A stretch of 64,000 bases of DNA from Podarcis muralis (Eukaryota). The notes below the pieces were generated by a model. That model saw nothing but the letters and a program-made list of their open reading frames with translations, did not search any database and was not told where the DNA came from. Positions 1 through 59,889 of this stretch are shown here, piece by piece. The stretch's first letter is position 1; each line of letters begins with the position of its first letter. The stretch spans positions 111,166,001 through 111,230,000 of the forward strand of contig NC_135657.1 in the NCBI RefSeq assembly GCF_964188315.1. The letters are read 5' to 3'. The position numbers and the translations under genes were made by a program.

Positions 1-168
1 ATTGCAAAAGTAGTTGCTCCGTACATGACCACAGAACATATATAACGTTGCAATCAAAATCTCAATGATGTACATTTCACTGATGTCAGTGGAGTATACA
101 CGGTGAAGACTTCATCCTATTTATTATTTGACCTTCATTTATTTGTTATTTGGCTTTCATTTTCTCAG

Positions 169-313
169 GCAAGAGGGGGACCTCGGAAGTACAGTGTGTC
201 TGGATGGTTACAAATTCAAGGGATCAAGAAATCAGATGAAGGTGTCTACATATGCCAAACAAAAAACAAATATGGGTTTGCCTATTCATCTGCAATGCTG
301 AAAGTTATTGATG
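169..313 (+). CDS. Penultimate coding exon of a Kazald-family (IGFBP-Kazal-Ig, KAZALD1 paralogue) gene; C-terminal half of the Ig domain
   Basis: Acceptor tttctcAG (167-168), donor GTaaat (314). Encodes ARGGPRKYSVSGWLQIQGIKKSDEGVYICQTKNKYGFAYSSAMLKVID, with the Ig DxGxYxC motif. Resembles KAZALD1 as recalled (RGGPQRFEVTGWLQIQAVRPSDEGTYRC). Confidence 0.85.
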
Positions 314-618
314 GTAAATTACTGTATTATTATTATTATTATTATTAGTCCTTTTTCCATGACAGGGGACTCAGGGTGGTTCACAGATAAAAGTAAGAAA
401 ACCTAAAAACATAGAAAAAAACAATAATTAAGAAAAAAATTAACATTGATAGAAATGTATATCTATTAATAATATAAACAGCACGGCACCAGCCCTTTTA
501 TTAAAAACAATCAGTTCCCAAAAAGTCTGCTGGCGGAAGGACATAAAAAGATCAAGCTTTCGGTGGTGGTTGCCTGATTCTGCTAATAGGAACCCAAATT
601 GTTCATTTCAAACCAGCA

Positions 619-972
619 CAGTGGTACCTTGCAAGACGAATGCCTCGCAAGACGGAAAACTCGCAAGACGAAAGGGTTTTTGGTTTTTTGAGTTGCTTCG
701 CAAGACGATTTTCCCTATGGGCTTGCTTCGCAAGACGGAAACATCTTGCAAGTTTGTTTCCTTTTTCTTAAAACCGTTAATACAGTTGCGACTTGACTTC
801 GAGGAGCAACTCATAGCACGCGGTGTGGTAGCCTTTTTTGAGGTTTTTGAAGACTTTGGTGATTTTTGAAGCTTTTCCAAAACTTTTCCGACACTGTGCT
901 TCGCAAGACGAAAAAATCGCAAGACGAAAAAACTCGCAGAACGAATTAATTTTGTCTTGCGAGGCACCACTG
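619..972. mobile_element. ~355-bp Tc1/mariner (Tigger/pogo-like) MITE, family A copy 1
   Basis: TIRs CAGTGGTACCT..GCAAGACGAA / TT..GTCTTGCGAGGCACCACTG with TA on the right. Near-identical to 8476-8830 and 27475-27829. Confidence 0.9.
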
Positions 973-1175
973 TATGTTTTAGATAGGGAATCTATGTTTC
1001 AGTGGACATAATGGCTTTTTTAAATCAGTGTTTCCCAGTCCTGCTACCTGAACTGAACCTGCCCAGGAATGAAACTGGGCCCTCCTGCAGGCAAAAGAGG
1101 GCCCTATCCACTAACTTATGGCCACTCCCCAATCACAAGCTTAATTGTTAACACTAAATGTCCCTTTTTCTGCAG

Positions 1176-1306
1176 ACTCATCATTAAATTTCCAGAATAT
1201 TCCTGGCAGCTGGAGCACAAGCGATGGCACAGATTACGGAGACGATTTTGATTCTGCTGAAGACGAGGAAGAGGCAGAATATGAATCTGGAGACTATGAA
1301 AAATGA
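1176..1306 (+). CDS. Terminal coding exon of the Kazald-family gene (acidic tail)
   Basis: Acceptor ctttttctgcAG (1174-1175), phase 1 matching the previous donor. Encodes DSSLNFQNIPGSWSTSDGTDYGDDFDSAEDEEEAEYESGDYEK, stop TGA at 1304-1306. KAZALD1 also ends in an acidic Tyr-containing tail. Confidence 0.8.
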
Positions 1307-1826
1307 AGCAAGTTTGGATTGTGTAAGGGGTTGTTACGTGCTGATGCTTTCAAGTTCATCCATTTTGCTTGTGTGATTTGCACTGTCCTGAAACCTCATA
1401 TTATCACAACAAAAATGTGTATCAAATTCTAGAAATTATCACAGTGCCTAGAAGTATACATACCATTTCAATCACACTATTCTAATTTTAAGCCTCCATT
1501 ATATTTATTATATTCAGAATCCTGCACACTGAGAAAAACCATAGTGGCAAAAGATATAAACGTTGCACTTATCAAGATCCCTCTACAATTCCTTGTGTGA
1601 GATATAGCTCTCTGTCATACAGCTGTAGGGCAGGAAAGTCACATGAGGACTTCACAGTCACAGTAAGTTGTTGAAGACCGATACCACCACGTGATTGCTG
1701 TCCAGAGTGCAACAAGAGTGGGACAAAAATAACCTGTTAAAAAGTTACAGGATTTCAGCAGGAAGTTACACTGATTGGAAGTGCAGTAGTGTGACCATCC
1801 CAAAACATTTTCACTGCCCTGATCAG

Positions 1827-2114
1827 TGGTAAAGGTAAAGGTAAAGGACCCCTGACCATTAGGTCCAGCCGTGACCAACTCTGGGGTTGCGGCGCTCATC
1901 TCTCTTTACTGGCCGAGGGAGCCGGCGTTCAGCTTCCGGGTCATGTGGCCAGCATGATTAAGCCGCTTCTGGCGAACCAGAGCAGCGCACAGAAACACCG
2001 TTTACCTTCCTGTCAGACCGGTACCTATTTATCTACTTGCACTTTGACATGCTTTTGAACTGCTAGGTTGGCAGGAGCAGGGACCGAGCAACGGGAGCTC
2101 ACCCCGTCACGGGG
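1827..2114 (-). mobile_element. Sauria SINE, 5'-truncated
   Basis: Reverse-complement (ACCTTT)n tail at 1827-1847; body matches the full-length copies in this window; tRNA-like head missing. Confidence 0.9.
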
Positions 2115-4404
2115 ATAGTTGCATATTATTTAGTCCCCATGCAAAAGGGAAGAAAACCCTTTCCAAACCCAGTGGTACCAGCTGATTCAGAATTGCTGCC
2201 ATTTTTATAAAGCAGTGACATGCTGCAGGAGTGAAAGGCAATACTCTTCAACCTTTTTTTTTCTGTTGGAGAAGCTGAAATATTCTGGGAATTCCCATTA
2301 TATGCTGAAGGCCTGTAAATTGGCATTGTTAAAACTAGAATACCACATCTTTGTGGCATGGAAGTTAATCAAGCAAAGTGGTCCCGTTGCAGGTGAATTT
2401 CACTATGGTTTCAACAAACAATTTTCCATGTCTGAAGCATTCGTGTTTCATCTATCACAGTATGGATTTATTTCAAGGTCAGCTTCACATAAATAATTCA
2501 ATCTAACATTTTAGGGTAATCTGCAGCACAAAACATTTGACAAACTACAGATTGCTTATTTGCAAATAAATGTATTTAAGTCTAAGGACAACAGTTAAAT
2601 ATTCATAAGCACATAATATATAAGGCAATACTGGTGATAAGTTCCTCTTTTTATACTCCATGGACACCTCAGATCCATTATAAGGGTAAACCTCCTTTGG
2701 AGGTGTTAAGTTTTAGCTCACAAGCCTTTTGAATGCTGGAAAGTAGGACCTGGTCATACTAAAGCTGGTGACAAAATATCACAATTAGCACAATTAAATC
2801 CTCCTTTTACTTCCAGACAACTCTGATTGTTCAGAGCCTATCAAGGAGCAAGAGAAATCACTAGTTTGCCAGCAGGTTGACTCAGGAATTTCACCCCTCC
2901 AGTTTATCTCAGAAGCTGGCTGCCCAACTCTAGTGCATTTTCCCCCTCCCTTTCTTTCAGGATTAAAAGAGCACATTTGCTTGCTTGTTTTGGCATTAGA
3001 ATGAAACATGCCCTTTGGAGGCCTAATTCTCACAGAAAGCACTAAAAAGAGGCAAGCGGTAAAACCATTCACAAACGCACTTTTTCCAGCAGTTTTGCAA
3101 GTCTCCTCTCAAGAAAGTTATCCATATTTCTATGTTCCCACCTGATTCTAAAACTGCAAGCAATATCTGGTGTGAGTCTCTTGGACAATTGTTGTTCAGT
3201 ACTTTCTGAGCAGCCCTCAGGCAGAGGCTCAAAGGTCTCAGTTTCAGCAAATCTCCGTCTCACTAACCATGTTCAGGCGATCTCAGGGAGATTGAATAGC
3301 CATTTGCATGGCTGCAGTTTCAGTCTGCCCCACAACCATGATCACTGATTGGAGATACAATAAATGAGCTGTGGTGGTTAAATCAGCGCCAGGGATTTTC
3401 AACTCCAGACTTCAGGTGGAAGAAAACTTTGGAGTGAATGTTCCTTCATGCCAAATAAATAAATAAAAATCAAATATATACATGGGGAGGGGGGCCCTGG
3501 CACAGAGACAACTAAATGTCAGGAAGAAGAATTCGAGTCTGGCTTCCTCCTAAGGAGTGGTTGTGCCAATTTGACAATTAATGTTCTAAGCCCACCAATA
3601 GTGAGTTGCAAGAAAGACAGTGCTTAATATTGACTCAAGACAGTGCTTAATATTGACTGTAGGGCACTGGGCCCATCAAAGACATCACAACAGCCCCCAA
3701 TATTGATTGTTTCATTTTAATTTAAGTGTGTCACTGGCAGGACATGTGTGTTGCATACAGAAAGTTGAAGTTTCCGTACCGACCACCCCAGCTAAGGCAC
3801 TAGGCTATCTCACACACATTCCATATTCTCCCAAACTGAGCCTTACTTAAGCCAGTGTGATGTTGCGGTTAGTCTAGGACCAGGAATCTGGAATTTTTCG
3901 GATACGCCTGTGCACATCGGCATGAATTTGAAATTCTGTCTGTGTTCGGCTACCCGGAGCTTAAATACATGACCTTCCACACAACCTTCCACACACGTAT
4001 TTGGAGAGGTTCCCTAACTTGGCAGAAAGAGAAAAGACCTGAAATACAGGACAAAACTGTTATCCACCTGCTTTCTACATTGAAATACGGGACAATCCTG
4101 TATTATACAGGACAAGTGACAACAGCGCCAGATTGAACCCTATGGAGGGCCCTTAGGGCCTAGGCAGTCGCAATCTCAGAGGGCCCTTCGCAAATTATCT
4201 CCTAATATGTTTTTGATTTTACCAGCCAAACCAAATCAATATTATTTTGACCCCCAAAAGGCCCGTAGACCGGCGCCAACTCTGCCTATTTGGCAACCCC
4301 CAACCCTAGCTCCCTGGGGTCCAGAGACCTTGTTATGAAAGTGCGCCTTTCGCACATGTATCATAGGGGTCAGGGCTGTATTTAGGTTTGATGTGGCCCT
4401 AAGC

Positions 4405-4656
4405 CAGGGGTAGGCAACTTAAGGCCCATGGGCCGAATGTGGCCCAATTGCCTTCTCAATCTGGCCTGCAGACGGTTCGGGAATCAGTGTGTTTTTACAT
4501 GAGTTGAATGTGTGCTTTTATTTAAAATGCATCTCTGGGTTATTTGTGGGGCGTAGGAATTTGTTCATTTTCCCCCCTTCAAAATATAGTCTGGCCCTCC
4601 ACATGGTCTGAGGGATGGTGGACCGGCCCATGACTGAAAAAGGTTGCTGACCCCTG
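4405..4656. mobile_element. hAT (Charlie-like) MITE
   Basis: Ends CAGGGGTAGGCAAC / GTTGCTGACCCCTG; perfect 8-bp TSD CCCTAAGC (4397-4404, 4657-4664). Confidence 0.9.
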
Positions 4657-4729
4657 CCCTAAGCTACTGAAGGTATATGTCCAGCTGTCCTTTGTCAACA
4701 ACAAATTGTCACTATTTTTTTCTGTTGAA

Positions 4730-4955
4730 TAGTGATACCTCGGGTTAAGTACTTATTTCGTTCTGGAGGTCCGTTCTTAACGTGAAAGTGTTCTTAACCT
4801 GAAGCACCACTTTAGCTAATGGGCCCTCCCGCTGCTGCCGCGCCGCCACCACATGATTTCTGTTCTCATCCTGAAGCAAAGTTCTTAACCTGAGGTAATA
4901 TTTCTGGGTTAGCGGAGTCCGTAACCTGAAGCATCTGTAACCTGAGGTACCACTG
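4730..4955. mobile_element. Tigger-like MITE, family B
   Basis: Degenerate left TIR TAGTGATACCTCGGGTTA; right TIR TAACCTGAGGTACCACTG followed by TA. Body shared with 54062-54265. Confidence 0.85.
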
Positions 4956-5019
4956 TATACGCTTATGTGGTAATTGATGGACCTAATAGGCATCTAAAGC
5001 CATTTGCACATAAGAAACA

Positions 5020-5191
5020 GGAGCCTACACAACACAAAACACTGTTGCTGTATGTAGGTTTTATTTTATTTCTTTTTTATCTTACATTTTGGAAATGTAC
5101 ATCCTTTTTTTCCCTCTTTACATTTTTGGGGGACCCCAAGAGAGTGGAGCCCTAAACTAGAACTTGTTGAGCTTATATGTAAATCCACACT
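5020..5191. mobile_element. Probable hAT-like MITE right-end remnant containing the left arm of the 57-bp inverted repeat
   Basis: Ends ...GTAAATCCACACTG, resembling the CAGTG-type termini of other hAT MITEs here. No left end or TSD found. Confidence 0.4.
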
Positions 5192-5284
5192 GATAGGGGT
5201 CAACTCCTAGGGGGGTCTCCCCCCCCAAAAAATATATATATATTTGAAGGGGCTGCCTCACCCCGCCCCCAGGTTGATGGACAC

Positions 5285-5909
5285 TGCCATTCAAATAGCG
5301 CGCGTGTGCCGTGACACGTGACCAACCCTGTGGGCGGGGCTCAACCTGCCCGCCTGTCATTCCGTTCAGGTCGGCGCCCTTGACACGCGTCGAGTTCAAA
5401 CGGGGCCAGATAAGGCGGCGGGGATTTAAAACACGCGCGGAAATACTTCAGAGGGCCGCGAGGGGCCTGGTTCCTCTCCTCCCTCCGCGGTGCTCCCCTC
5501 AACCCCTTCCCCGCCGCCGCCTCCTCTCGCTCCGCCTCCTCCCGCCGGGCCTGCCCTCTCCTCCTCCGGCCCGGGCTGCTCGCGGCGTCGCCCTCCCGCC
5601 CCGCTGGAAGATGGCGCTGAGCGGCCAGGTCAGTGGGCGCCCCGGGCGGCGGCGGCGACGTCGAACCCGGAGCCTGACCGTTGCGTGGCGGGGAGATGGC
5701 TCGTCCCCGTGGGGAGTGGGACGCGCGGGGGGGGGGGCGGGTAGGCCGCCGGCCGAGCGGGGCGGCAGCGCAGCCCCGGGGGGAAGGGGTGGGGGGCGGG
5801 CGGGAGAGGAAGGCTGCCCCACCGCCGCACGTCCGTTGGGGATGCGGCGAGGAAGAGACGCCTGGGGGGGGGGGGGCTGCGGGGATCGTGTGGGGCGGGG
5901 AAAAGTAAG

Positions 5910-5910
<1 letters not shown>
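5285..5910 (+). promoter_or_regulatory. RANBP17: CpG island / promoter and 5' UTR of RANBP17
   Basis: Very GC- and CpG-rich stretch around the ATG at 5611; E-box CACGTG (5315-5320); GC box GGGCGGGGC (5332-5340); no TATA box evident. Confidence 0.85.
5611..5628 (+). CDS. RANBP17: RANBP17 coding exon 1 (MALSGQ)
   Basis: gaagATGG Kozak context, donor GTcagt at 5629. Human N-terminus recalled as MALHFQ|SLAEL. Confidence 0.9.

Positions 5911-5911
<1 letters not shown>

Positions 5912-5946
<35 letters not shown>
5912..5946. repeat. (CA)n microsatellite
   Basis: About 17 uninterrupted AC units. Confidence 0.97.
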
Positions 5947-5947
<1 letters not shown>

Positions 5948-6095
5948 GAATATAGATAAGAAAAAAAGGATGTACATTTCCAAAATGTAAGATAAAAAAG
6001 AAATAAAATAAAACCTTTCAAGAATAGAGGGATGTCAACTATATCTATATCTAATCTATATATGGACATATATATGTATGTATCTGTGTATATAT

Positions 6096-6440
6096 GCACA
6101 CTTCTTCAGATACGTGTATCTGAAGAAGTGTGCATGCACACGAAAGCTCATACCAAGAACTAACTTAGTTGGTCTTTAAGGTGCTACTGGAAGGAATTTT
6201 TTTTGTTTTGACTATGGCAGACCAACACGGCTACCTATCTGTAACTGTGTATATATATAACTGTAGTTACAGGTAGGTAGCCGTCTTGGTCTGCTGTAGT
6301 TGAAACAGAGACCAACTAAGTTTGTTATTGGTTATGAGCTTTCGTGTGCATCTGAAGAAGTGCATGCACACGGAAGCTCACACCAATAACAAACTTAGTT
6401 GGTCTCTAAGGCACTACTGAAAGGATATTTTTTTGTTTTA
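6096..6440. mobile_element. Cluster of four Penelope-like element terminal fragments in alternating orientation (-,+,-,+)
   Basis: Motif CTGAAGAAGTG...CACGAAAGCTCATACC...TTAGTTGGTCT.TAAGG.GC(T)ACT...GGCTACC is typical of reptile Penelope pseudo-LTRs (from memory). Arms are mutually reverse-complementary. Confidence 0.7.
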
Positions 6441-6469
6441 TATATAATTGTGTGTGTCATGGAAAGTTA

Positions 6470-6950
6470 CATGTGCGTTTGTGTACAGCTATTTCTGTGT
6501 GCCATGAAAGACACAGGTGTGTGTATGTGTAATTATTTGTGTGTGTCTTGAAAGACACATGTGCATTTGTGTATAACTTACTGGTATGTGCCTTGAAAGA
6601 CACATGTGCATTTGTGTATAACTGTTTCTTTGTGCCATGTATGCATGTATTACTCTTTGTGTGTCTTGAAAGACACATGTGCGTGTGTGTATAACTTACT
6701 GGTGTGTGCCCTGAAAGACACATGTGCATTAGTGTATAATTCTTTGTGCCATGTATGCATGTATAACTCTTTGTGTGTGTCTTGGAAGACACATGTCAAC
6801 GTGTGTATAACTTACTGGTGTGTACCCTGAAAGACACATGTGCGTTTGTGTATAACTATTTGTGCCTTGAAAGGCACACACATGTATGCATGTATAACTA
6901 TTTGTTTGTGTCATGAAAGATACAAATGTGTATGTATGCATGCATGCAGA
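6470..6950. repeat. TG-rich minisatellite, ~45-bp monomer with a ~117-bp higher-order period
   Basis: GAAAGACACA-like cores at 6506, 6550, 6595, 6668, 6713, 6784, 6829, 6869, 6915. Confidence 0.85.
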
Positions 6951-8475
6951 GAGCATGTGGCACCAAACTTGCAAAGTTATGCTATCTTCTTTATGCAGAT
7001 CAAATTTAATGTAAGTTCACCCCCACCTTTTTAATATATTCTATTTCAAGCACCAAACAAAACATTTATTTCTCAAAACTGTGAATTTGAATTACACATA
7101 ACACCAATGTATTTTAATTACATAAGAACAATTGTTGCCTTCATGGACAAATGTCCTTGTTTGACACTCCTAGATATTTGTTTGGTTTGGCCTTTCTTTT
7201 CTCTGTTTCTGATACTCTGTTACAGCTATTTTTCTTGTTTTATATCCATTGGAAAAAAATAAACAAACTCCCACCAGATTATCTCTTACAACTGTAAGTC
7301 ATGTCTGGAATCTATTCACCACACATTGGGATTATCTGTTTAAAGCATTAAAGCCAAGTTTGACATGTTTGACATCAGTTTTTAACCTTTAAATCTCTAA
7401 AAAGTCTGGGTCTGGGATATTTTAGGGAATGTATTTTCCTGCATTATCTCACCCCTGAGAAGTGAGATAAGTGATTGTGAATTCCATTGTCAAGGGTGGC
7501 TTGATTGGCATCTACTGGTGGTGACTCCTTTTCTATAGAAAAGGGAAGTTTGCCTGATCTCCATGCTTGACTCTTGGACAAAGCAAGAGGGAAGTGGGTG
7601 AATCCTCAGTGAAATAATAGCCCAATCCAGAGCCCTGACAGTTTTTGGGAAGTGTGTATGTGTTGGGTGGTGGTATGCCTGCCCTAGACTCCTCCCCTTG
7701 TTGGGGGAATGGGTAGGCTCTAGATCCTGTTGATATGAAGCTTCTCTCAATGTGTCACCATGAAGTGTAAAGTCTGAAATATCAGCTGCCCATAGAAGAG
7801 CAGTTAATGCTCAATCTGCTGGAGCTTTTAAACTCCGGTTGTATACTTCTGATATTATCTCCTGGCTGGCTTTAGTTATTTGATTAGTATTATTTTTATT
7901 GAATCTGTTGTTTGAATTTTGCGCCTATGCTACCTTGGAATGAAAGGTGGCTTACAAATACTTGTGATGATTTCTTTCTGTCCATTAGAGGTACGAGGTA
8001 CATAACACTACTTGAAGTTTGTATTTGCATCATGACTGCACTCATGCAAACAATGAGGGGACATATTGGGGCCTCTAGTTGGTGCACATCTGAGTTTGCG
8101 GAAGGTAGAGAAAAAGTTGGTGAAACACTCTTTTGGCTGGTGACCAAGAATACCCTATTCCAGTCCTTTCCTTTTGGGAACAGAAAAGAAAAATATTTGA
8201 TATCTATTGGGTAAAAATTCAATTGTTTATTTCAGTTTTAGGACATATTTACATATTCAACAAAATTTACTCTCTTCTGGCTAAGACAAGGGTAGACAAG
8301 CTGTTGCCCTTCAGATGTTGTTGGCTTACAATGGCTATTATCTGTGATCATGAATGGGGTTTATGGGAACTGGAATCTAGTAACATCTGGAGGACCATAT
8401 CTTTCTCATCCCTGCCCTAAGAACATAAAATGGACATGCTGGACCAGAACATGAGCCAGTCTAGCTAGCCAGGTA

Positions 8476-8830
8476 CAGTGGTACCTCGCAAGACGAATGC
8501 CTCGCAAGACAAAAAACTCGCTAGACGAAAGGGTTTTTTGTTTTTTGAGCTGCTTCGCAAGACGATTTTCCCTATGGGCTTGCTTCGCAAGACGGAAACG
8601 TCTTGCAAGTTTGTTTCCTTTTTCTTAACACCGTTAATACAGTTGCGACTTGACTTCGAGGAGCAACTCATAGAACGCGGTGTGGTAGCCTTTTTTGAGG
8701 TTTTTAAAGACTTTGGTGATTTTTGAAGCTTTTCCAAAACTTTCCCGACACCGTGCTTCGCAAGACAAAAAAAATCGCAAGATGACAAAACTCGCGGAAC
8801 GAATTAATTTCGTCTTGCGAGGCACCACTG
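8476..8830. mobile_element. MITE family A copy 2
   Basis: TA-CAGTGGTACCTCGCAAGACGAA ... TTCGTCTTGCGAGGCACCACTG-TA. Confidence 0.92.
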
Positions 8831-9194
8831 TACCCCTTAAACCTTACAAGTAGGTAAGAAGGTGAAGGTATCATTCCTTTCAGCATGGAGGTTCTGTTTA
8901 GCTATCATGGCCAATAGATGCTAATAGACATCCCAGAAGGAGACGTCTAACTCCCTGTGAAAACAATATGTTGTTAGGGTAGAGAAGGGGTAGTGTTAAG
9001 CACTTTGTATTTTTATGTACTTTGATAATCATCTAATAATTGTCCTTCACATGAAGTTGCTATTACTAGGGTAATGACTGTACCTTGACATGCACTCTGC
9101 TTACAAAGGGCAATTATAGATATTCAGCATAATCTTTCACTAAGAGCAGATCAACAAACATTTCACTTTGTTTGAAATCTGTTTAACCAGATTA

Positions 9195-9430
9195 CAGTGG
9201 TACCTTGGTTTAAGAACAGCTTAGTTTATGAACAACTTGGATTAAGAAAGCTGCAAACCCGAAAGGAGGTGTTTTGGTTTGTGAACTTTGCCTTGGAATA
9301 AGAACATGTTTTGCTTCCTGTTGAGTGTGTTCCATTTGTAAATTGAGTCCCCTGCTGCTGTGGGAAAGCATGCCTTGGTTTAAGAACAGACTTCTGGAGT
9401 GGATTAAGTTCATAAACCAAGATACCATTG
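9195..9430. mobile_element. Tigger-like MITE, family C
   Basis: TA-CAGTGGTACCTTGGTTTA ... TAAACCAAGATACCATTG-TA; body shared with 34677-34930. Confidence 0.88.
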
Positions 9431-10348
9431 TACATCCACTTTGTTAGTTTTGTCTTAATACTCCTGCATCCCCAGTAATACGTGAATACGCCTAAGTTTT
9501 ATGGTGATGAGATTCAAGCTTACTGTGTTTTAACTGTGTGGACACAGTATGTTTTCCTAACTGTTATTATATTTAACCTGTATACCTGAGAGAGGAGGGA
9601 ATCACAGTGTATTTGGGCAAAAGTTATTCATGCACCTTGATTCTTCCTTTGATTAGGAAGGATATCCCACACCTCACAAGTGGTGAGGTGGAAACTAAAT
9701 TTATATTCTTTCTTGGTAAGTGGGAAATAAATGGCAAAGACCAAAAGCAGCACTGAAAATATTGATTATTACTGTTAACTTTGCCTGCTTTCTTGTTTGT
9801 TAAGTGCAAGAAAAAATATTGCTGATTTAGATGCTCAAGGAAATTTAATTGCTTGTGCATGATCTTCCATTTTGGATCTGACAAATAACCCCTGTTTCCT
9901 TTGCACATATTCTACTTCAGTGCTAGGATATGTTTCTTGGGTGATAAATGAACAAATTACTTTTGAGCAGTGAGTGGGAGGAATTGGATGAGCATCCCCT
10001 GTGTCCTTCCTCCCTACCCCTTGGCAATGGCTTAGGGATACTTCATTATTTAAACACACAGGGTTGCACTTGCAATGTATGTGCATTTAACCAATGTGAT
10101 TTCAAGTTTATGCACTTGGCAAGCTGGGAGGGTGGGCAGTAGGCTGGGAGGAAAACATAGGCAATTCCACCTGCAATTGCACTTGCATTTGGAGGTGCAG
10201 TTAGAGTGTGTGTGTGACCTTAGGAGAGTATTACAGGCCATTTCCCAGTTTTAAAATGGTTTTTCTGACTACATACAATTGTGGTTTTATGTGCTGTCTC
10301 TGGAACAGAACCCAAACAAAAGATGTGAGTTGATTGTATCTGACTTTA

Positions 10349-10987
10349 CCATACAGTGATGCCTCGCAAGACGAAAATAATCTGTTCCGCGAGTCTCTTC
10401 GTCTAGCGGTTTTTTCGTCTTGCGAAGCAACCCTATTAGCGGCTTAGCGGATTAGTGCTATTAGCGGTTTAGCGGCTTAGCGGCTATTAAAGGCTTAGCG
10501 GCTTAGCGGCTAAAAGGCTATTAGCGGCTTAGCGGCTATTAAAGGCTTAGCGGCTTAGCGGCTAAAAGGCTATTAGCGGCTTAGCGGCTATTAAAGGCTT
10601 AGCGGCTTAGCGGCTAAAAGGCTATTAGCGGCTTAGCGGCTTAGAAAAAGGGGGGAAAGCGAAAAAAATCGCAAGACTCGCAAGACGTTTCCGTCTTGCG
10701 AAGCAAGCCCATAGGGAAAATCATCTTGCGAAGCGCATCGAAAAACGGAAAACCCTTTCGTCTAGCGGGTTTTTCGTCTTGTGAGGCATTCGTCTTGCGG
10801 GGCACCACTGTACTTTCTCGAGTCTAATGCACCATTGAATCTAACATGCACCTCAATTTTCAGAACCTTGAAACAAAAAAAAGTATTTGATGGTGAATGT
10901 AAATGTGCCATCGAATCTAATGCGTACCTTAATTTTCGCAACGCAGTTTGGCCAAAAAAGGTGAGAGTTAGATTCCAGTAAATATGG
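10349..10987. mobile_element. Tc2/pogo-like MITE split by a nested insertion in its left TIR
   Basis: TA-CCATA|[insert]|CTTTCTCGAGTCTAA ... TTAGATTCCAGTAAATATGG-TA. The rejoined left end matches the reverse complement of the right end at 16/20. Confidence 0.7.
10354..10810. mobile_element. MITE family A-related subfamily with an internal TTAGCGGC minisatellite
   Basis: TA-CAGTGATGCCTCGCAAGACGAA ... TTCGTCTTGCGGGGCACCACTG-TA. The right ~145 bp matches the reverse complement of the family A left end. Confidence 0.88.
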
Positions 10988-11157
10988 TAGTGATACTCAG
11001 GAAAGACCCATTGAGATGAATGATATTAAGGTAGTTATGAATATGACTTGTATACAGCCCATTCTGACTTTCATATTCTATATCAATGTGCATGAATAAA
11101 TAGTACTGTGAGGATATTAATGGAGGGCAATTCATGTCTGATTTTTACCCCCAGCAG

Positions 11158-11304
11158 AGTCTGGCAGAGCTAGAAGTTCTTTGTAAACAGCTCTACGAGG
11201 GGACAGACTTAGCACAGCGAATACAAGCAGAAAAGGTGCTATTGGAGCTTATTAATAGTCCTGAATGTCTTAGCCAATGCCAGCTTTTACTGGAACAAGG
11301 AACA
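11158..11304 (+). CDS. RANBP17: RANBP17 exon 2
   Basis: cagcAG|[49 protein letters not shown]|GTaagt; 147 nt, phase 0/0. Confidence 0.97.
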
Positions 11305-12495
11305 GTAAGTGCTTCAAACTTTATTATCTAAATACACATTCATTAAATGCCCATCCTTTCTCTGCTTTTCATAAACCGTAGTGTGAGATTTGAAAGTAGT
11401 GATAATGAACTTTTGTAGATTAAAAGGAGATTCCCTCCAACCCCAATGAAAATAAGTTGGCTGCAACGTAATCATTGGAGGTGCTTTTTCTTCTGCTTGT
11501 TTTGCTTGTTTTGATTTTCAAATGACACCCCCCCCCCCATTATGGATAAGGTTTGTACAAGCATTAATACTTTAGAAGAACATAGCAAATATGTCATATT
11601 TATGCATAAGTTAGGAGCTTACCATTCCACATGATAATGGTTTGGTTTACACAAATGAAATATTAGCTCCCTTGGGTAAAATGGTGAAATCATTCTAGAC
11701 TCTCCAAGTTTATCAGTCTAAAGCTATGATCTGGCAGATCAAATCTATGTATTCAGGTTGAACATCTCTCTTCCTGCTTACGGACAGGGAAAGAGTCCCC
11801 TTAACTTATAGAGCTCAGAGGCAGAAGGGGCCACATTTATGCAGTATGCATTTATGCAGTATGAAGTCTGCAGTAGGGTCTAGAGAGTATGGACTAAATG
11901 TCCTTCAGCCACAGGCAACTTGGTCAGTGATGAGGGATGGTGGGAATTGTAGCCCAAACCATCTGGAGGGTACTGGGTTGTTGTTGGCCGCCATTTGTCT
12001 TGAGAGACAATGGAGTACGCCTCCAGGGATGAAGTCAAATTGCTGTGTTAGCAGCACTGAAGTGACTTCCCTGGGGCGCAAGCCTGGGCAATGTGTATGG
12101 AGGTCCTGGGCTGCCCAGATAACAAACTCCTCTCTTGGCCTCGCTGATGTTGCTTTAGTTGTTCTGAGAGAGCCGTGATTTCAAAGGAGGGACTGTAGGG
12201 TCTATGAAGGTATGACCCTGTGTATATTTTATAGGCATATCCTTGAAAGTAATATATAGCTGTTAGATAAATATAGTACGTGTCTTAATCCCATGTTGCT
12301 TACATAGTAAATCTCAGGACTGAGCTGTAAATTGTATCAAAATGCACACATCCAAGTAAGTAGAGCAAATTTGTCACAGCAAGGTTTTAGGAGATGTGTT
12401 TCTTGTTGCAAGATTATCTTTTTGGATGCTATTTAAGGATTTTTAAAAAATGAATAGTTATTACTGCCACCTGAATTGTGTGCATTTTCCCCTAG

Positions 12496-12586
12496 ACCTC
12501 TTATGCACAACTGTTAGCAGCAACATGCCTCTCAAAACTTGTGTGCAAAACACCTCCTTTACCTGTTCAGCAAAGGATGGACATCA
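12496..12586 (+). CDS. RANBP17: RANBP17 exon 3
   Basis: cctAG|[30 protein letters not shown](R)|GTaagt; 91 nt. Confidence 0.97.
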
Positions 12587-45340: not shown

Positions 45341-45511
45341 NNNNNNNNNNNNNNNNNNNNNNNNNNNNNNNNNNNNNNNNNNNNNNNNNNNNNNNNNNNN
45401 NNNNNNNNNNNNNNNNNNNNNNNNNNNNNNNNNNNNNNNNNNNNNNNNNNNNNNNNNNNNNNNNNNNNNNNNNNNNNNNNNNNNNNNNNNNNNNNNNNNN
45501 NNNNNNNNNNN
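45341..45511. other. Assembly gap (171 N)
   Basis: Run of N. Confidence 1.
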
Positions 45512-59613: not shown

Positions 59614-59889
59614 NNNNNNNNNNNNNNNNNNNNNNNNNNNNNNNNNNNNNNNNNNNNNNNNNNNNNNNNNNNNNNNNNNNNNNNNNNNNNNNNNNNNNNN
59701 NNNNNNNNNNNNNNNNNNNNNNNNNNNNNNNNNNNNNNNNNNNNNNNNNNNNNNNNNNNNNNNNNNNNNNNNNNNNNNNNNNNNNNNNNNNNNNNNNNNN
59801 NNNNNNNNNNNNNNNNNNNNNNNNNNNNNNNNNNNNNNNNNNNNNNNNNNNNNNNNNNNNNNNNNNNNNNNNNNNNNNNNNNNNNNNNN
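59614..59889. other. Assembly gap (276 N)
   Basis: Run of N. Confidence 1.

What the first reader, a model, noticed from the sequence alone, without database searches (positions are those of the whole stretch)
5056..6016. Perfect 57-bp inverted repeat brackets the whole RANBP17 promoter, CpG island and exon 1
Seen: 5056-5112 (AGGTTTTATTTTATTTCTTTTTTATCTTACATTTTGGAAATGTACATCCTTTTTTTC) is the exact reverse complement of 5960-6016, including homopolymer lengths. The 847-bp spacer holds the promoter and exon 1, and there is no TSD outside the arms. The left arm sits inside a probable MITE remnant; the right arm is isolated, next to (CA)n and the Penelope cluster. Inference: 100% identity suggests a recent local templated (fold-back or template-switch) copy or gene conversion rather than two independent insertions. 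It could serve as a substrate for inverting the promoter, which would silence RANBP17 and point transcription toward the Kazald gene.
Basis: partly seen in the sequence, partly recalled or inferred. Interest (0 to 1): 0.7.

Follow-up and report, generated by a model that had tools for sequence, protein, structure and literature searches.

The report
Short inverted copy flanking RANBP17 promoter
A 57-base stretch just upstream of a lizard gene's promoter reappears, letter-perfect but backwards, in the gene's first intron; it is most likely a small harmless copy-paste scar of DNA repair or replication, not a switch that flips the promoter.

Summary
Window 5056-5112 and 5960-6016 are exact reverse complements, 57 nt each and 847 nt apart. 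They enclose a 656-bp CpG island and the first coding exon (MALSGQ, then a GT donor) of a RANBP17-like gene whose exons 2 and 3 follow on the same strand. The 57-mer has no other copy in the 64-kb window. It is the only long exact match in the window with no weaker homology beyond its ends, so it does not look like a pair of transposon copies. The right arm alone sits between two copies of CAAGAATA, like a 66-nt insertion with a target duplication (P about 0.01-0.05). A 9-mer inside the left arm recurs just outside it (P about 0.03). Both weakly suggest the left arm is the source and the right arm the copy. Best reading (about 0.5): a local templated inverted insertion made by fold-back or template-switch synthesis, probably neutral. 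The rivals are fragments of a young dispersed repeat and an assembly error. The promoter-inversion idea is speculative, since 57 nt is well below the usual homology needed. First-stage notes list similar perfect short inverted duplications on other DNA of this genome.

The parts
5056..5112 (+). Left arm of the perfect inverted repeat. Probable source copy, about 140 nt upstream of the CpG island.
   Evidence: The 9-mer TTACATTTT inside it (5082-5090) recurs just outside at 5118-5126. There is no flanking direct repeat.
5960..6016 (-). Right arm, the exact reverse complement of the left arm, in intron 1. Probable derived copy.
   Evidence: It lies between two CAAGAATA copies.
5945..5952 (+). 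First copy of the CAAGAATA direct repeat (target-duplication-like), 5' of the right arm.
   Evidence: An 8-nt shared word in 20-nt flanks has an empirical P of about 0.008. A gapped version of the test gives P of about 0.05.
6019..6026 (+). Second copy of CAAGAATA, 3' of the right arm.
5953..5959 (+). 7 nt (TAGATAA) of unassigned filler between the first direct repeat and the right arm.
   Evidence: AGATAA also occurs inside the arm.
6017..6018 (+). 2 nt (TT) of filler between the right arm and the second direct repeat.
5083..5099 (+). Small hairpin inside the arm (7-bp stem TACATTT/AAATGTA, 3-nt loop). It is mirrored in the right arm at 5973-5989.
   Evidence: Read directly from the sequence.
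5250..5905 (+). CpG island and promoter in the spacer. It contains an E-box at 5315, GC boxes, and a TTTAAAA at 5425.
5611..5628 (+). Coding part of exon 1 (MALSGQ), followed by donor GT at 5629-5630.
   Evidence: Its orientation agrees with exons 2 and 3.
6002..6012 (+). Two overlapping AATAAA hexamers that the right arm places in the sense direction in intron 1. The same hexamers read on the minus strand in the left arm at 5060-5070.

Best explanation
The right arm is a small templated insertion. A DNA end or nascent strand at about 5952-5959 in intron 1 primed on the same strand about 0.85 kb upstream. This could be fold-back (snap-back) synthesis after resection of a break, or a template switch at a stalled fork. 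It copied 57 nt (or about 49 nt, if the A-run at the start was already there and served as the primer), came off the template, and was joined back to the other end. The result is a reverse-complement copy, a few filler bases (TAGATAA and TT) and an 8-nt duplication of the target (CAAGAATA). The event left the CpG-island promoter and exon 1 untouched and in their normal orientation. The repeat is most likely a neutral scar. What is shown: the exact, isolated, sharply bounded inverted copy; the flanking direct repeat; and the intact, correctly oriented exon 1. What is inferred: the direction (left to right), the enzymology, the age, and neutrality.
For: The match is exact over 57 nt and homology ends completely at both ends. 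Every other exact match of 43 nt or more in the window lies inside a longer 76-96% homology on at least one side, as transposon copies do; this one has none on either side. There is no third copy in 64 kb, even at 3 mismatches or with word size 7. Other inverted pairs in the window are 84-94% identical transposon copies. The right arm alone is flanked by CAAGAATA, with 66 nt between the copies (P about 0.008). The left arm shares a 9-mer with its own outer flank, as expected if it is native there (P about 0.03). Exon 1 has the same orientation as exons 2 and 3, so the spacer was neither inverted nor mis-oriented by an assembler. Inverted templated insertions of this size are documented: fold-back insertions of 2-150 bp at yeast breaks (PMC11724301), germline inverted MMBIR-type insertions of 25 bp or more in humans (PMC8421209), and template-switch events that create new inverted repeats (PMC5453318).
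Against: There is no outgroup and there are no reads, so neither the ancestral empty site nor the reality of both arms was seen. The flanking-repeat evidence is modest: P is about 0.05 in a gapped test, and three flank pairs were examined. The documented processes use templates within about 100 bp or within a fork, whereas the template here is 0.85 kb away. In the four-point model a flank duplication means that switch point 4 precedes point 1, a type not seen in human-chimp data. No junction microhomology can be demonstrated without the ancestral sequence. Genome-wide copy number of the 57-mer is unknown.
Confidence: 0.5

Rival explanations
1. The arms are two fragments of one young dispersed repeat. 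The right arm would be a severely 5'-truncated non-LTR (or other) insertion of about 62-66 nt with its own target duplication. The left arm would be the matching end of a longer copy inserted in the opposite orientation. The shared 57 nt would then be bounded by the element's terminus on one side and the truncation point on the other.
For: A target-duplication-like repeat around the right arm fits any insertion, including a retrotransposed fragment. The arm ends in an A-rich stretch with AATAAA. Unchecked scan notes report young LINEs and Penelope elements in this genome. A 64-kb window cannot detect families below tens of thousands of copies.
Against: There is no other copy or partial copy in the window. 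There is no poly(A) or microsatellite tail at either end of the insert. The identical interrupted A-rich pattern in both copies would have to be encoded internally in the element. Two perfect copies of a family within 1 kb, with none elsewhere in 64 kb, is a coincidence. All recognisable repeat pairs in the window are 6-16% diverged.
Confidence: 0.2
2. One arm is an assembly or polishing artefact in a region that is hard to sequence (80% GC, G11 and G13 runs, (CA)n) and does not exist in the animal.
For: The spacer is extreme in composition. First-stage notes list several other perfect short inverted duplications of unique-looking DNA in this assembly (unchecked); if all are perfect, that would hint at a systematic cause. 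I could obtain no read support.
Against: Fold-back chimeric reads give large palindromes, not a 57-nt copy with distinct flanks. An inverted gap-fill would put exon 1 on the wrong strand, and it is on the correct one. An artefact would not be expected to create an 8-nt target duplication. There are no gaps (N) within 39 kb of the feature.
Confidence: 0.12
3. The 961-bp unit is a mobile element with 57-nt terminal inverted repeats that carries the promoter, or the repeat is a maintained recombination switch that flips the promoter.
For: The arms are perfect and symmetric, and they bracket the whole promoter and exon 1.
Against: The unit has no target-site duplication: the outer flanks share at most 4 nt. 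There is no second copy. The interior is a host CpG-island promoter with a start-codon exon spliced in frame to downstream exons. 57 nt is well below the usual homology requirement. No recombinase gene was seen among ORFs in 1-7000. Gene conversion between old arms is excluded by the absence of flanking homology.
Confidence: 0.03

Closest known systems
Fold-back (snap-back) templated inverted insertions at double-strand breaks (yeast Break-Ins study, PMC11724301) and MMBIR-type templated insertions (MMB-TI, PMC8421209)
   Same: The insert is a reverse-complement copy of nearby sequence on the same chromosome. Its 57 nt falls within the reported 2-150 bp range. One junction carries a few unassigned bases, as in end joining. 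Such events exist as germline variants in humans.
   Different: The template is about 850 nt away, against a 41-nt loop in the yeast system and the limit of 100 bp or less used to define MMB-TI. Junction microhomology cannot be shown. There is an 8-nt flank duplication.
Short-range template-switch mutations, four-point model (Loytynoja and Goldman 2017, PMC5453318)
   Same: One event creates a new perfect inverted repeat flanked by dissimilar sequence, with no pre-existing homology needed.
   Different: That model is meant for switches within one fork over short distances. A flank duplication implies that point 4 precedes point 1, a class the authors did not observe.
Inverted-repeat-mediated inversions by non-allelic homologous recombination (Gu, Zhang and Lupski 2008, PMC2583991)
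   Same: Two identical inverted arms bracket a segment that recombination between them would flip.
   Different: The arms are 57 nt, against a minimal efficient processing segment of 134-232 bp (mitotic) or 300-500 bp (meiotic). Only rare events with under 50 bp are reported, and those for closely spaced repeats. No inverted allele was seen here.
MITE or TIR DNA transposon
   Same: Long perfect terminal inverted repeats about 1 kb apart.
   Different: No target-site duplication, no other copies in the window, and a host promoter plus exon as the interior.

Membership tests
Templated inverted insertion (fold-back / MMBIR-type) | The insert is the reverse complement of a nearby sequence on the same chromosome | tested here: met
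   57 of 57 nt complementary, 847 nt apart.
Templated inverted insertion (fold-back / MMBIR-type) | The template lies very close (100 bp or less in the MMBSearch definition; tens of nt loop in yeast) | tested here: not met
   The distance is 847 nt, against the definitions read.
Templated inverted insertion (fold-back / MMBIR-type) | Microhomology at the priming junction | tested here: inconclusive
   There is no homology beyond the arms. The A-run/T-run at the inner arm ends could have been the primer, but the ancestral sequence is unknown.
Templated inverted insertion (fold-back / MMBIR-type) | An ancestral allele without the insert exists | not testable with these tools
The only related contig found does not reach the promoter.
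Short-range template-switch mutation (four-point model) | Switch-point order among the observed types (point 4 does not precede point 1, so no flank duplication) | tested here: not met
   The CAAGAATA duplication around the insert implies that 4 precedes 1, a type not observed in PMC5453318.
Pair of dispersed-repeat copies | Weaker homology continues beyond the exact core on at least one side | tested here: not met
   All 10 comparison pairs in the window meet this; the 57-mer does not.
Pair of dispersed-repeat copies | Further copies elsewhere in the genome | tested here: inconclusive
   None in 64 kb. The rest of the genome was not searchable.
TIR transposon / MITE | Target-site duplication directly outside the terminal repeats | tested here: not met
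   The outer flanks share at most ATGT, and it is not adjacent.
Invertible promoter / NAHR inversion substrate | Homology at or above the minimal efficient processing segment | tested here: not met
   57 nt against 134-232 bp or 300-500 bp. Exceptions under 50 bp exist for close repeats.
Invertible promoter / NAHR inversion substrate | Both orientations of the spacer occur in molecules | not testable with these tools
   No reads were available.

The most novel reading that the evidence does not exclude
The repeat is a working substrate for occasional germline or somatic inversion of the 847-nt promoter and exon 1 cassette, which would make RANBP17 expression switchable. A milder version: because the arms flank a divergent CpG-island promoter, both the sense pre-mRNA and the upstream antisense RNA would carry the same 57-nt sequence with a hairpin and two AAUAAA signals about 0.4-0.5 kb from the start sites, giving symmetric early-termination modules.
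Probability: 0.03. Interest if true: 0.8.

Novelty: new member of a known kind. Interest (0 to 1): 0.28.

Why it matters
If the reading holds, this is a clean natural specimen of a templated inverted insertion whose template lies nearly 1 kb away. That is further than the ranges used to define such events in yeast and human surveys, and the insert carries a flank duplication that the short-range template-switch model did not observe. A genome-wide census of such isolated perfect inverted copies in this lacertid could show how far fold-back or template-switch synthesis reaches in vertebrate germlines. First-stage notes list several candidates. For RANBP17 itself, the likely consequence is nil.

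Tried and rejected

2. Orthologous loci. The one JGI contig fetched through the search for related loci (L001) shares the exon and a downstream conserved block, but has no CpG island in the 6.4 kb it extends downstream, so it gives no comparison. I do not take it for human and did nothing further with it.

3. Gene name. Pfam found nothing for exons 2 and 3. The word search gave only unnamed fragments. The PDB search gave nothing relevant. Exons were searched apart by reference, and the joined spliced model was deliberately not built.

4. A target duplication around the left arm (5041-5055 against 5163-5181, seen by eye) is not significant and was dropped.

5. Gene conversion between old arms was rejected for lack of any flanking homology.

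6. An inverted gap-fill artefact was rejected because exon 1 is on the correct strand.

7. An L1-type retrocopy of an upstream antisense transcript was considered. The arm contains AATAAA on that strand, but the insert has no poly(A) tail, so this is not favoured.

8. A Penelope-associated origin was considered. The arm has no similarity to the adjacent Penelope-like cluster.

9. Rfam on 6700-12000 found nothing.

Full report
**Observation.**
Window 5056-5112 and 5960-6016 are exact reverse complements, 57 nt each, with 847 nt between them. With up to three mismatches allowed, the 57-mer occurs only at these two places in the 64-kb window, and dinucleotide-preserving shuffles give none. The 25-nt core behaves the same way. 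A word-7 blastn of both arm contexts against the window finds nothing else. Gapped local alignment of the two contexts stops exactly at the 57 nt.

**What lies between and around the arms.**
- The spacer contains a CpG island, 5250-5905, with GC 0.74 and CpG o/e 0.88. The flanks have o/e of 0.2-0.44.
- Inside the island, ATG 5611 to CAG 5628 encodes MALSGQ and is followed by GT.
- Exon 2 encodes [49 protein letters not shown]. It runs from 11158 to 11304, or from 11155 if the upstream AG of a cagcag tandem acceptor is used.
- Exon 3 ([16 protein letters not shown]...) starts at 12496. Both exons follow on the + strand.
- From my memory of the human proteins, this N-terminus matches RANBP17 better than XPO7. 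The short exons drew no Pfam hit, only unnamed fragments in the word search, and nothing in the PDB. The name is therefore not database-verified here. I searched the exons apart and did not join them.
- At the start of the window, 103-345 (+) encodes the end of an immunoglobulin I-set domain. Its best named relative is a KAZALD1-like protein.
- The left arm lies about 140 nt upstream of the island. The right arm lies about 330 nt past the exon 1 donor. It comes just after (CA)n at 5913-5946 and about 75 nt before a Penelope-like fold-back cluster.

**Is it a pair of repeat copies?**
I listed all exact matches of 25 nt or more in the window in both orientations. For the longest ones, I measured identity in the 50 nt beyond each end. 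Every other match of 43 nt or more sits inside a longer homology of 76-96% on at least one side, as transposon copies do. The 57-mer alone has no flank similarity on either side. The other inverted pairs in the window are 120-220-nt transposon copies at 84-94% identity. Nothing in 4950-6100 recurs elsewhere in the window. A 64-kb window cannot exclude a low-copy or middle-copy family.

**New anatomy.**
- The outer flanks of the whole unit share nothing (longest common word 4 nt), and neither do the flanks of the left arm (3 nt).
- The right arm, however, lies between two copies of CAAGAATA, at 5945-5952 and 6019-6026.
- Between those copies are 66 nt: TAGATAA, the 57-nt arm, and TT.
- Across the window, an 8-nt shared word in such 20-nt flanks occurs at 0.8-0.9% of positions, and at a similar rate (0.77%) in local-composition shuffles.
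- A looser gapped test gives P of about 0.05. The evidence is suggestive, not strong.
- Separately, the 9-mer TTACATTTT inside the left arm (5082-5090) recurs just outside it (5118-5126). The empirical P is about 0.03. This is expected if the left arm is native to its surroundings.
- Both hints point the same way: the left arm is the source and the right arm the inserted copy.
- A possible duplication around the left arm that I saw by eye was not significant and is dropped.

**Mechanism.**
Take the top strand ending near 5952-5959 and fold it back onto itself just right of 5112. If it then copies leftwards to 5056, it produces exactly the observed orientation and sequence. Joining the displaced product to the other end would leave a few filler bases, and filling in a staggered break would leave the short duplication.

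Processes of this kind are documented:
- Fold-back inverted insertions of 2-150 bp form at yeast breaks. One end is extended by Pol delta and the other is captured by end joining (PMC11724301).
- Inverted MMBIR-type templated insertions of 25 bp or more are present as germline variants in humans (PMC8421209).
- Template-switch events create new inverted repeats flanked by dissimilar sequence (PMC5453318).

The fit is imperfect:
- Those studies define or observe templates within about 100 bp or within one fork, whereas the template here is 0.85 kb away.
- In the four-point model, a flank duplication corresponds to point 4 preceding point 1, a class not observed in human-chimp comparisons.
- Junction microhomology cannot be assessed without the ancestral sequence. 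The A-run at the inner end of the right arm could have been pre-existing and served as the primer, in which case only about 49 nt were newly made.

I therefore say it works like these processes and file it as a probable new member of that kind, with 0.5 confidence.

**Rivals.**
- **Young dispersed-repeat fragments (0.2).** The right-arm duplication fits any insertion, and unchecked scan notes report young LINEs and Penelope elements in this lacertid genome. Against this, there is no tail, no third copy, and no extended homology.
- **Assembly artefact (0.12).** The spacer is 80% GC with long G runs, and I have no reads. However, exon 1 is on the correct strand, so an inverted gap-fill is excluded. 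An artefact would not be expected to make a target duplication, and the nearest N run is 39 kb away.
- **Mobile cassette or maintained inversion switch (0.03).** There is no target duplication around the unit, the interior is a host promoter and exon, and no recombinase-like ORF lies nearby.
- **Gene conversion.** Excluded by the absence of flanking homology.

**On 'recent' and on inversion.**
The chance of zero differences in 2 x 57 nt is still 0.5 at about 3-6 million years and 0.05 at about 13-26 million years. This assumes neutral rates of 1-2e-9 per site per year (the rates come from my own knowledge). Perfection therefore only bounds the age loosely.

For inversion, mammalian assays show a 20-fold drop in recombination when uninterrupted homology falls from 232 to 134 bp, and human meiotic events need about 300-500 bp. 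Events with under 50 bp are recorded for repeats a few kb apart (PMC2583991). A 57-nt repeat 0.85 kb apart is thus at best a very inefficient substrate, and nothing here shows an inverted allele.

**A side observation.**
The arms flank a divergent CpG-island promoter. The sense pre-mRNA and any upstream antisense RNA would therefore both contain the same 57-nt sequence. That sequence has a 7-bp hairpin and two overlapping AAUAAA signals, at 6002-6012 on + and 5060-5070 on -. The sense-side signals lie 370 nt past a strong donor and are probably suppressed. This is inference only.

**Limits.**
- The single metagenome scan returned a vertebrate contig (L001) with the Kazald-like exon and a conserved downstream block, but it does not reach a CpG island.
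- As a result, the three decisive tests remain open: genome-wide copy number, long-read support, and the outgroup empty site.

**Earlier notes.**
First-stage notes on other DNA of this genome list other perfect short inverted duplications of unique-looking sequence, one of them 'flanked by direct repeats'. These notes are unchecked. They are a reason to run a census and are not support for my reading.

**Verdict.**
The feature is real in the assembly. It is probably a neutral templated inverted insertion, it is a new member of a known kind, and its interest is low to moderate (0.28).

Noticed in passing
window 6094-6441: A Penelope-like fold-back cluster. It holds a 20-nt perfect palindrome (6094-6113 / 6116-6135), CTGAAGA...GAAA hammerhead-like cores at about 6119-6147 and 6350-6377, and terminal segments repeated in direct (6130-6209 / 6360-6439, 88%) and inverted (6204-6246 / 6265-6307) orientation.
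   Followed up: no
window 6450-6950: A tandem array with a period of about 116 nt (three 110-nt copies at 84-86% identity, plus 42-46-nt sub-repeats of a GAAAGACACATGTG... motif) directly after the Penelope cluster in intron 1.
   Followed up: no
window 10469-10641: Perfect tandem repeat with a 52-nt period, in three or more exact copies, about 500 nt upstream of exon 2.
   Followed up: no
window 11149-11160: The exon 2 acceptor is a cagcag tandem (NAGNAG) site, so the protein could read MALSGQ-SLAELE or [13 protein letters not shown].
   Followed up: no
window 103-345 and 1203-1319; L001 9953-10121 and 11042-11158: The Kazald-like last exon (Ig I-set C-terminus) and a 117-nt block about 0.9 kb downstream are conserved (77% and 73.5%) in a vertebrate contig found in a JGI metagenome. 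The block is probably a conserved 3'UTR element.
   Followed up: partly
window 5121-5136 and 5211-5234: Imperfect inverted pair of T-run/G-run/C-run motifs (TTTTTGGGGGACCCC against GGGGGGTCTCCCCCCCCAAAAAA) just inside the left arm. It was seen by eye only.
   Followed up: no
window 45341-45511 and 59614-59889: Two runs of N (171 and 276 nt). I left them as they are.
   Followed up: no
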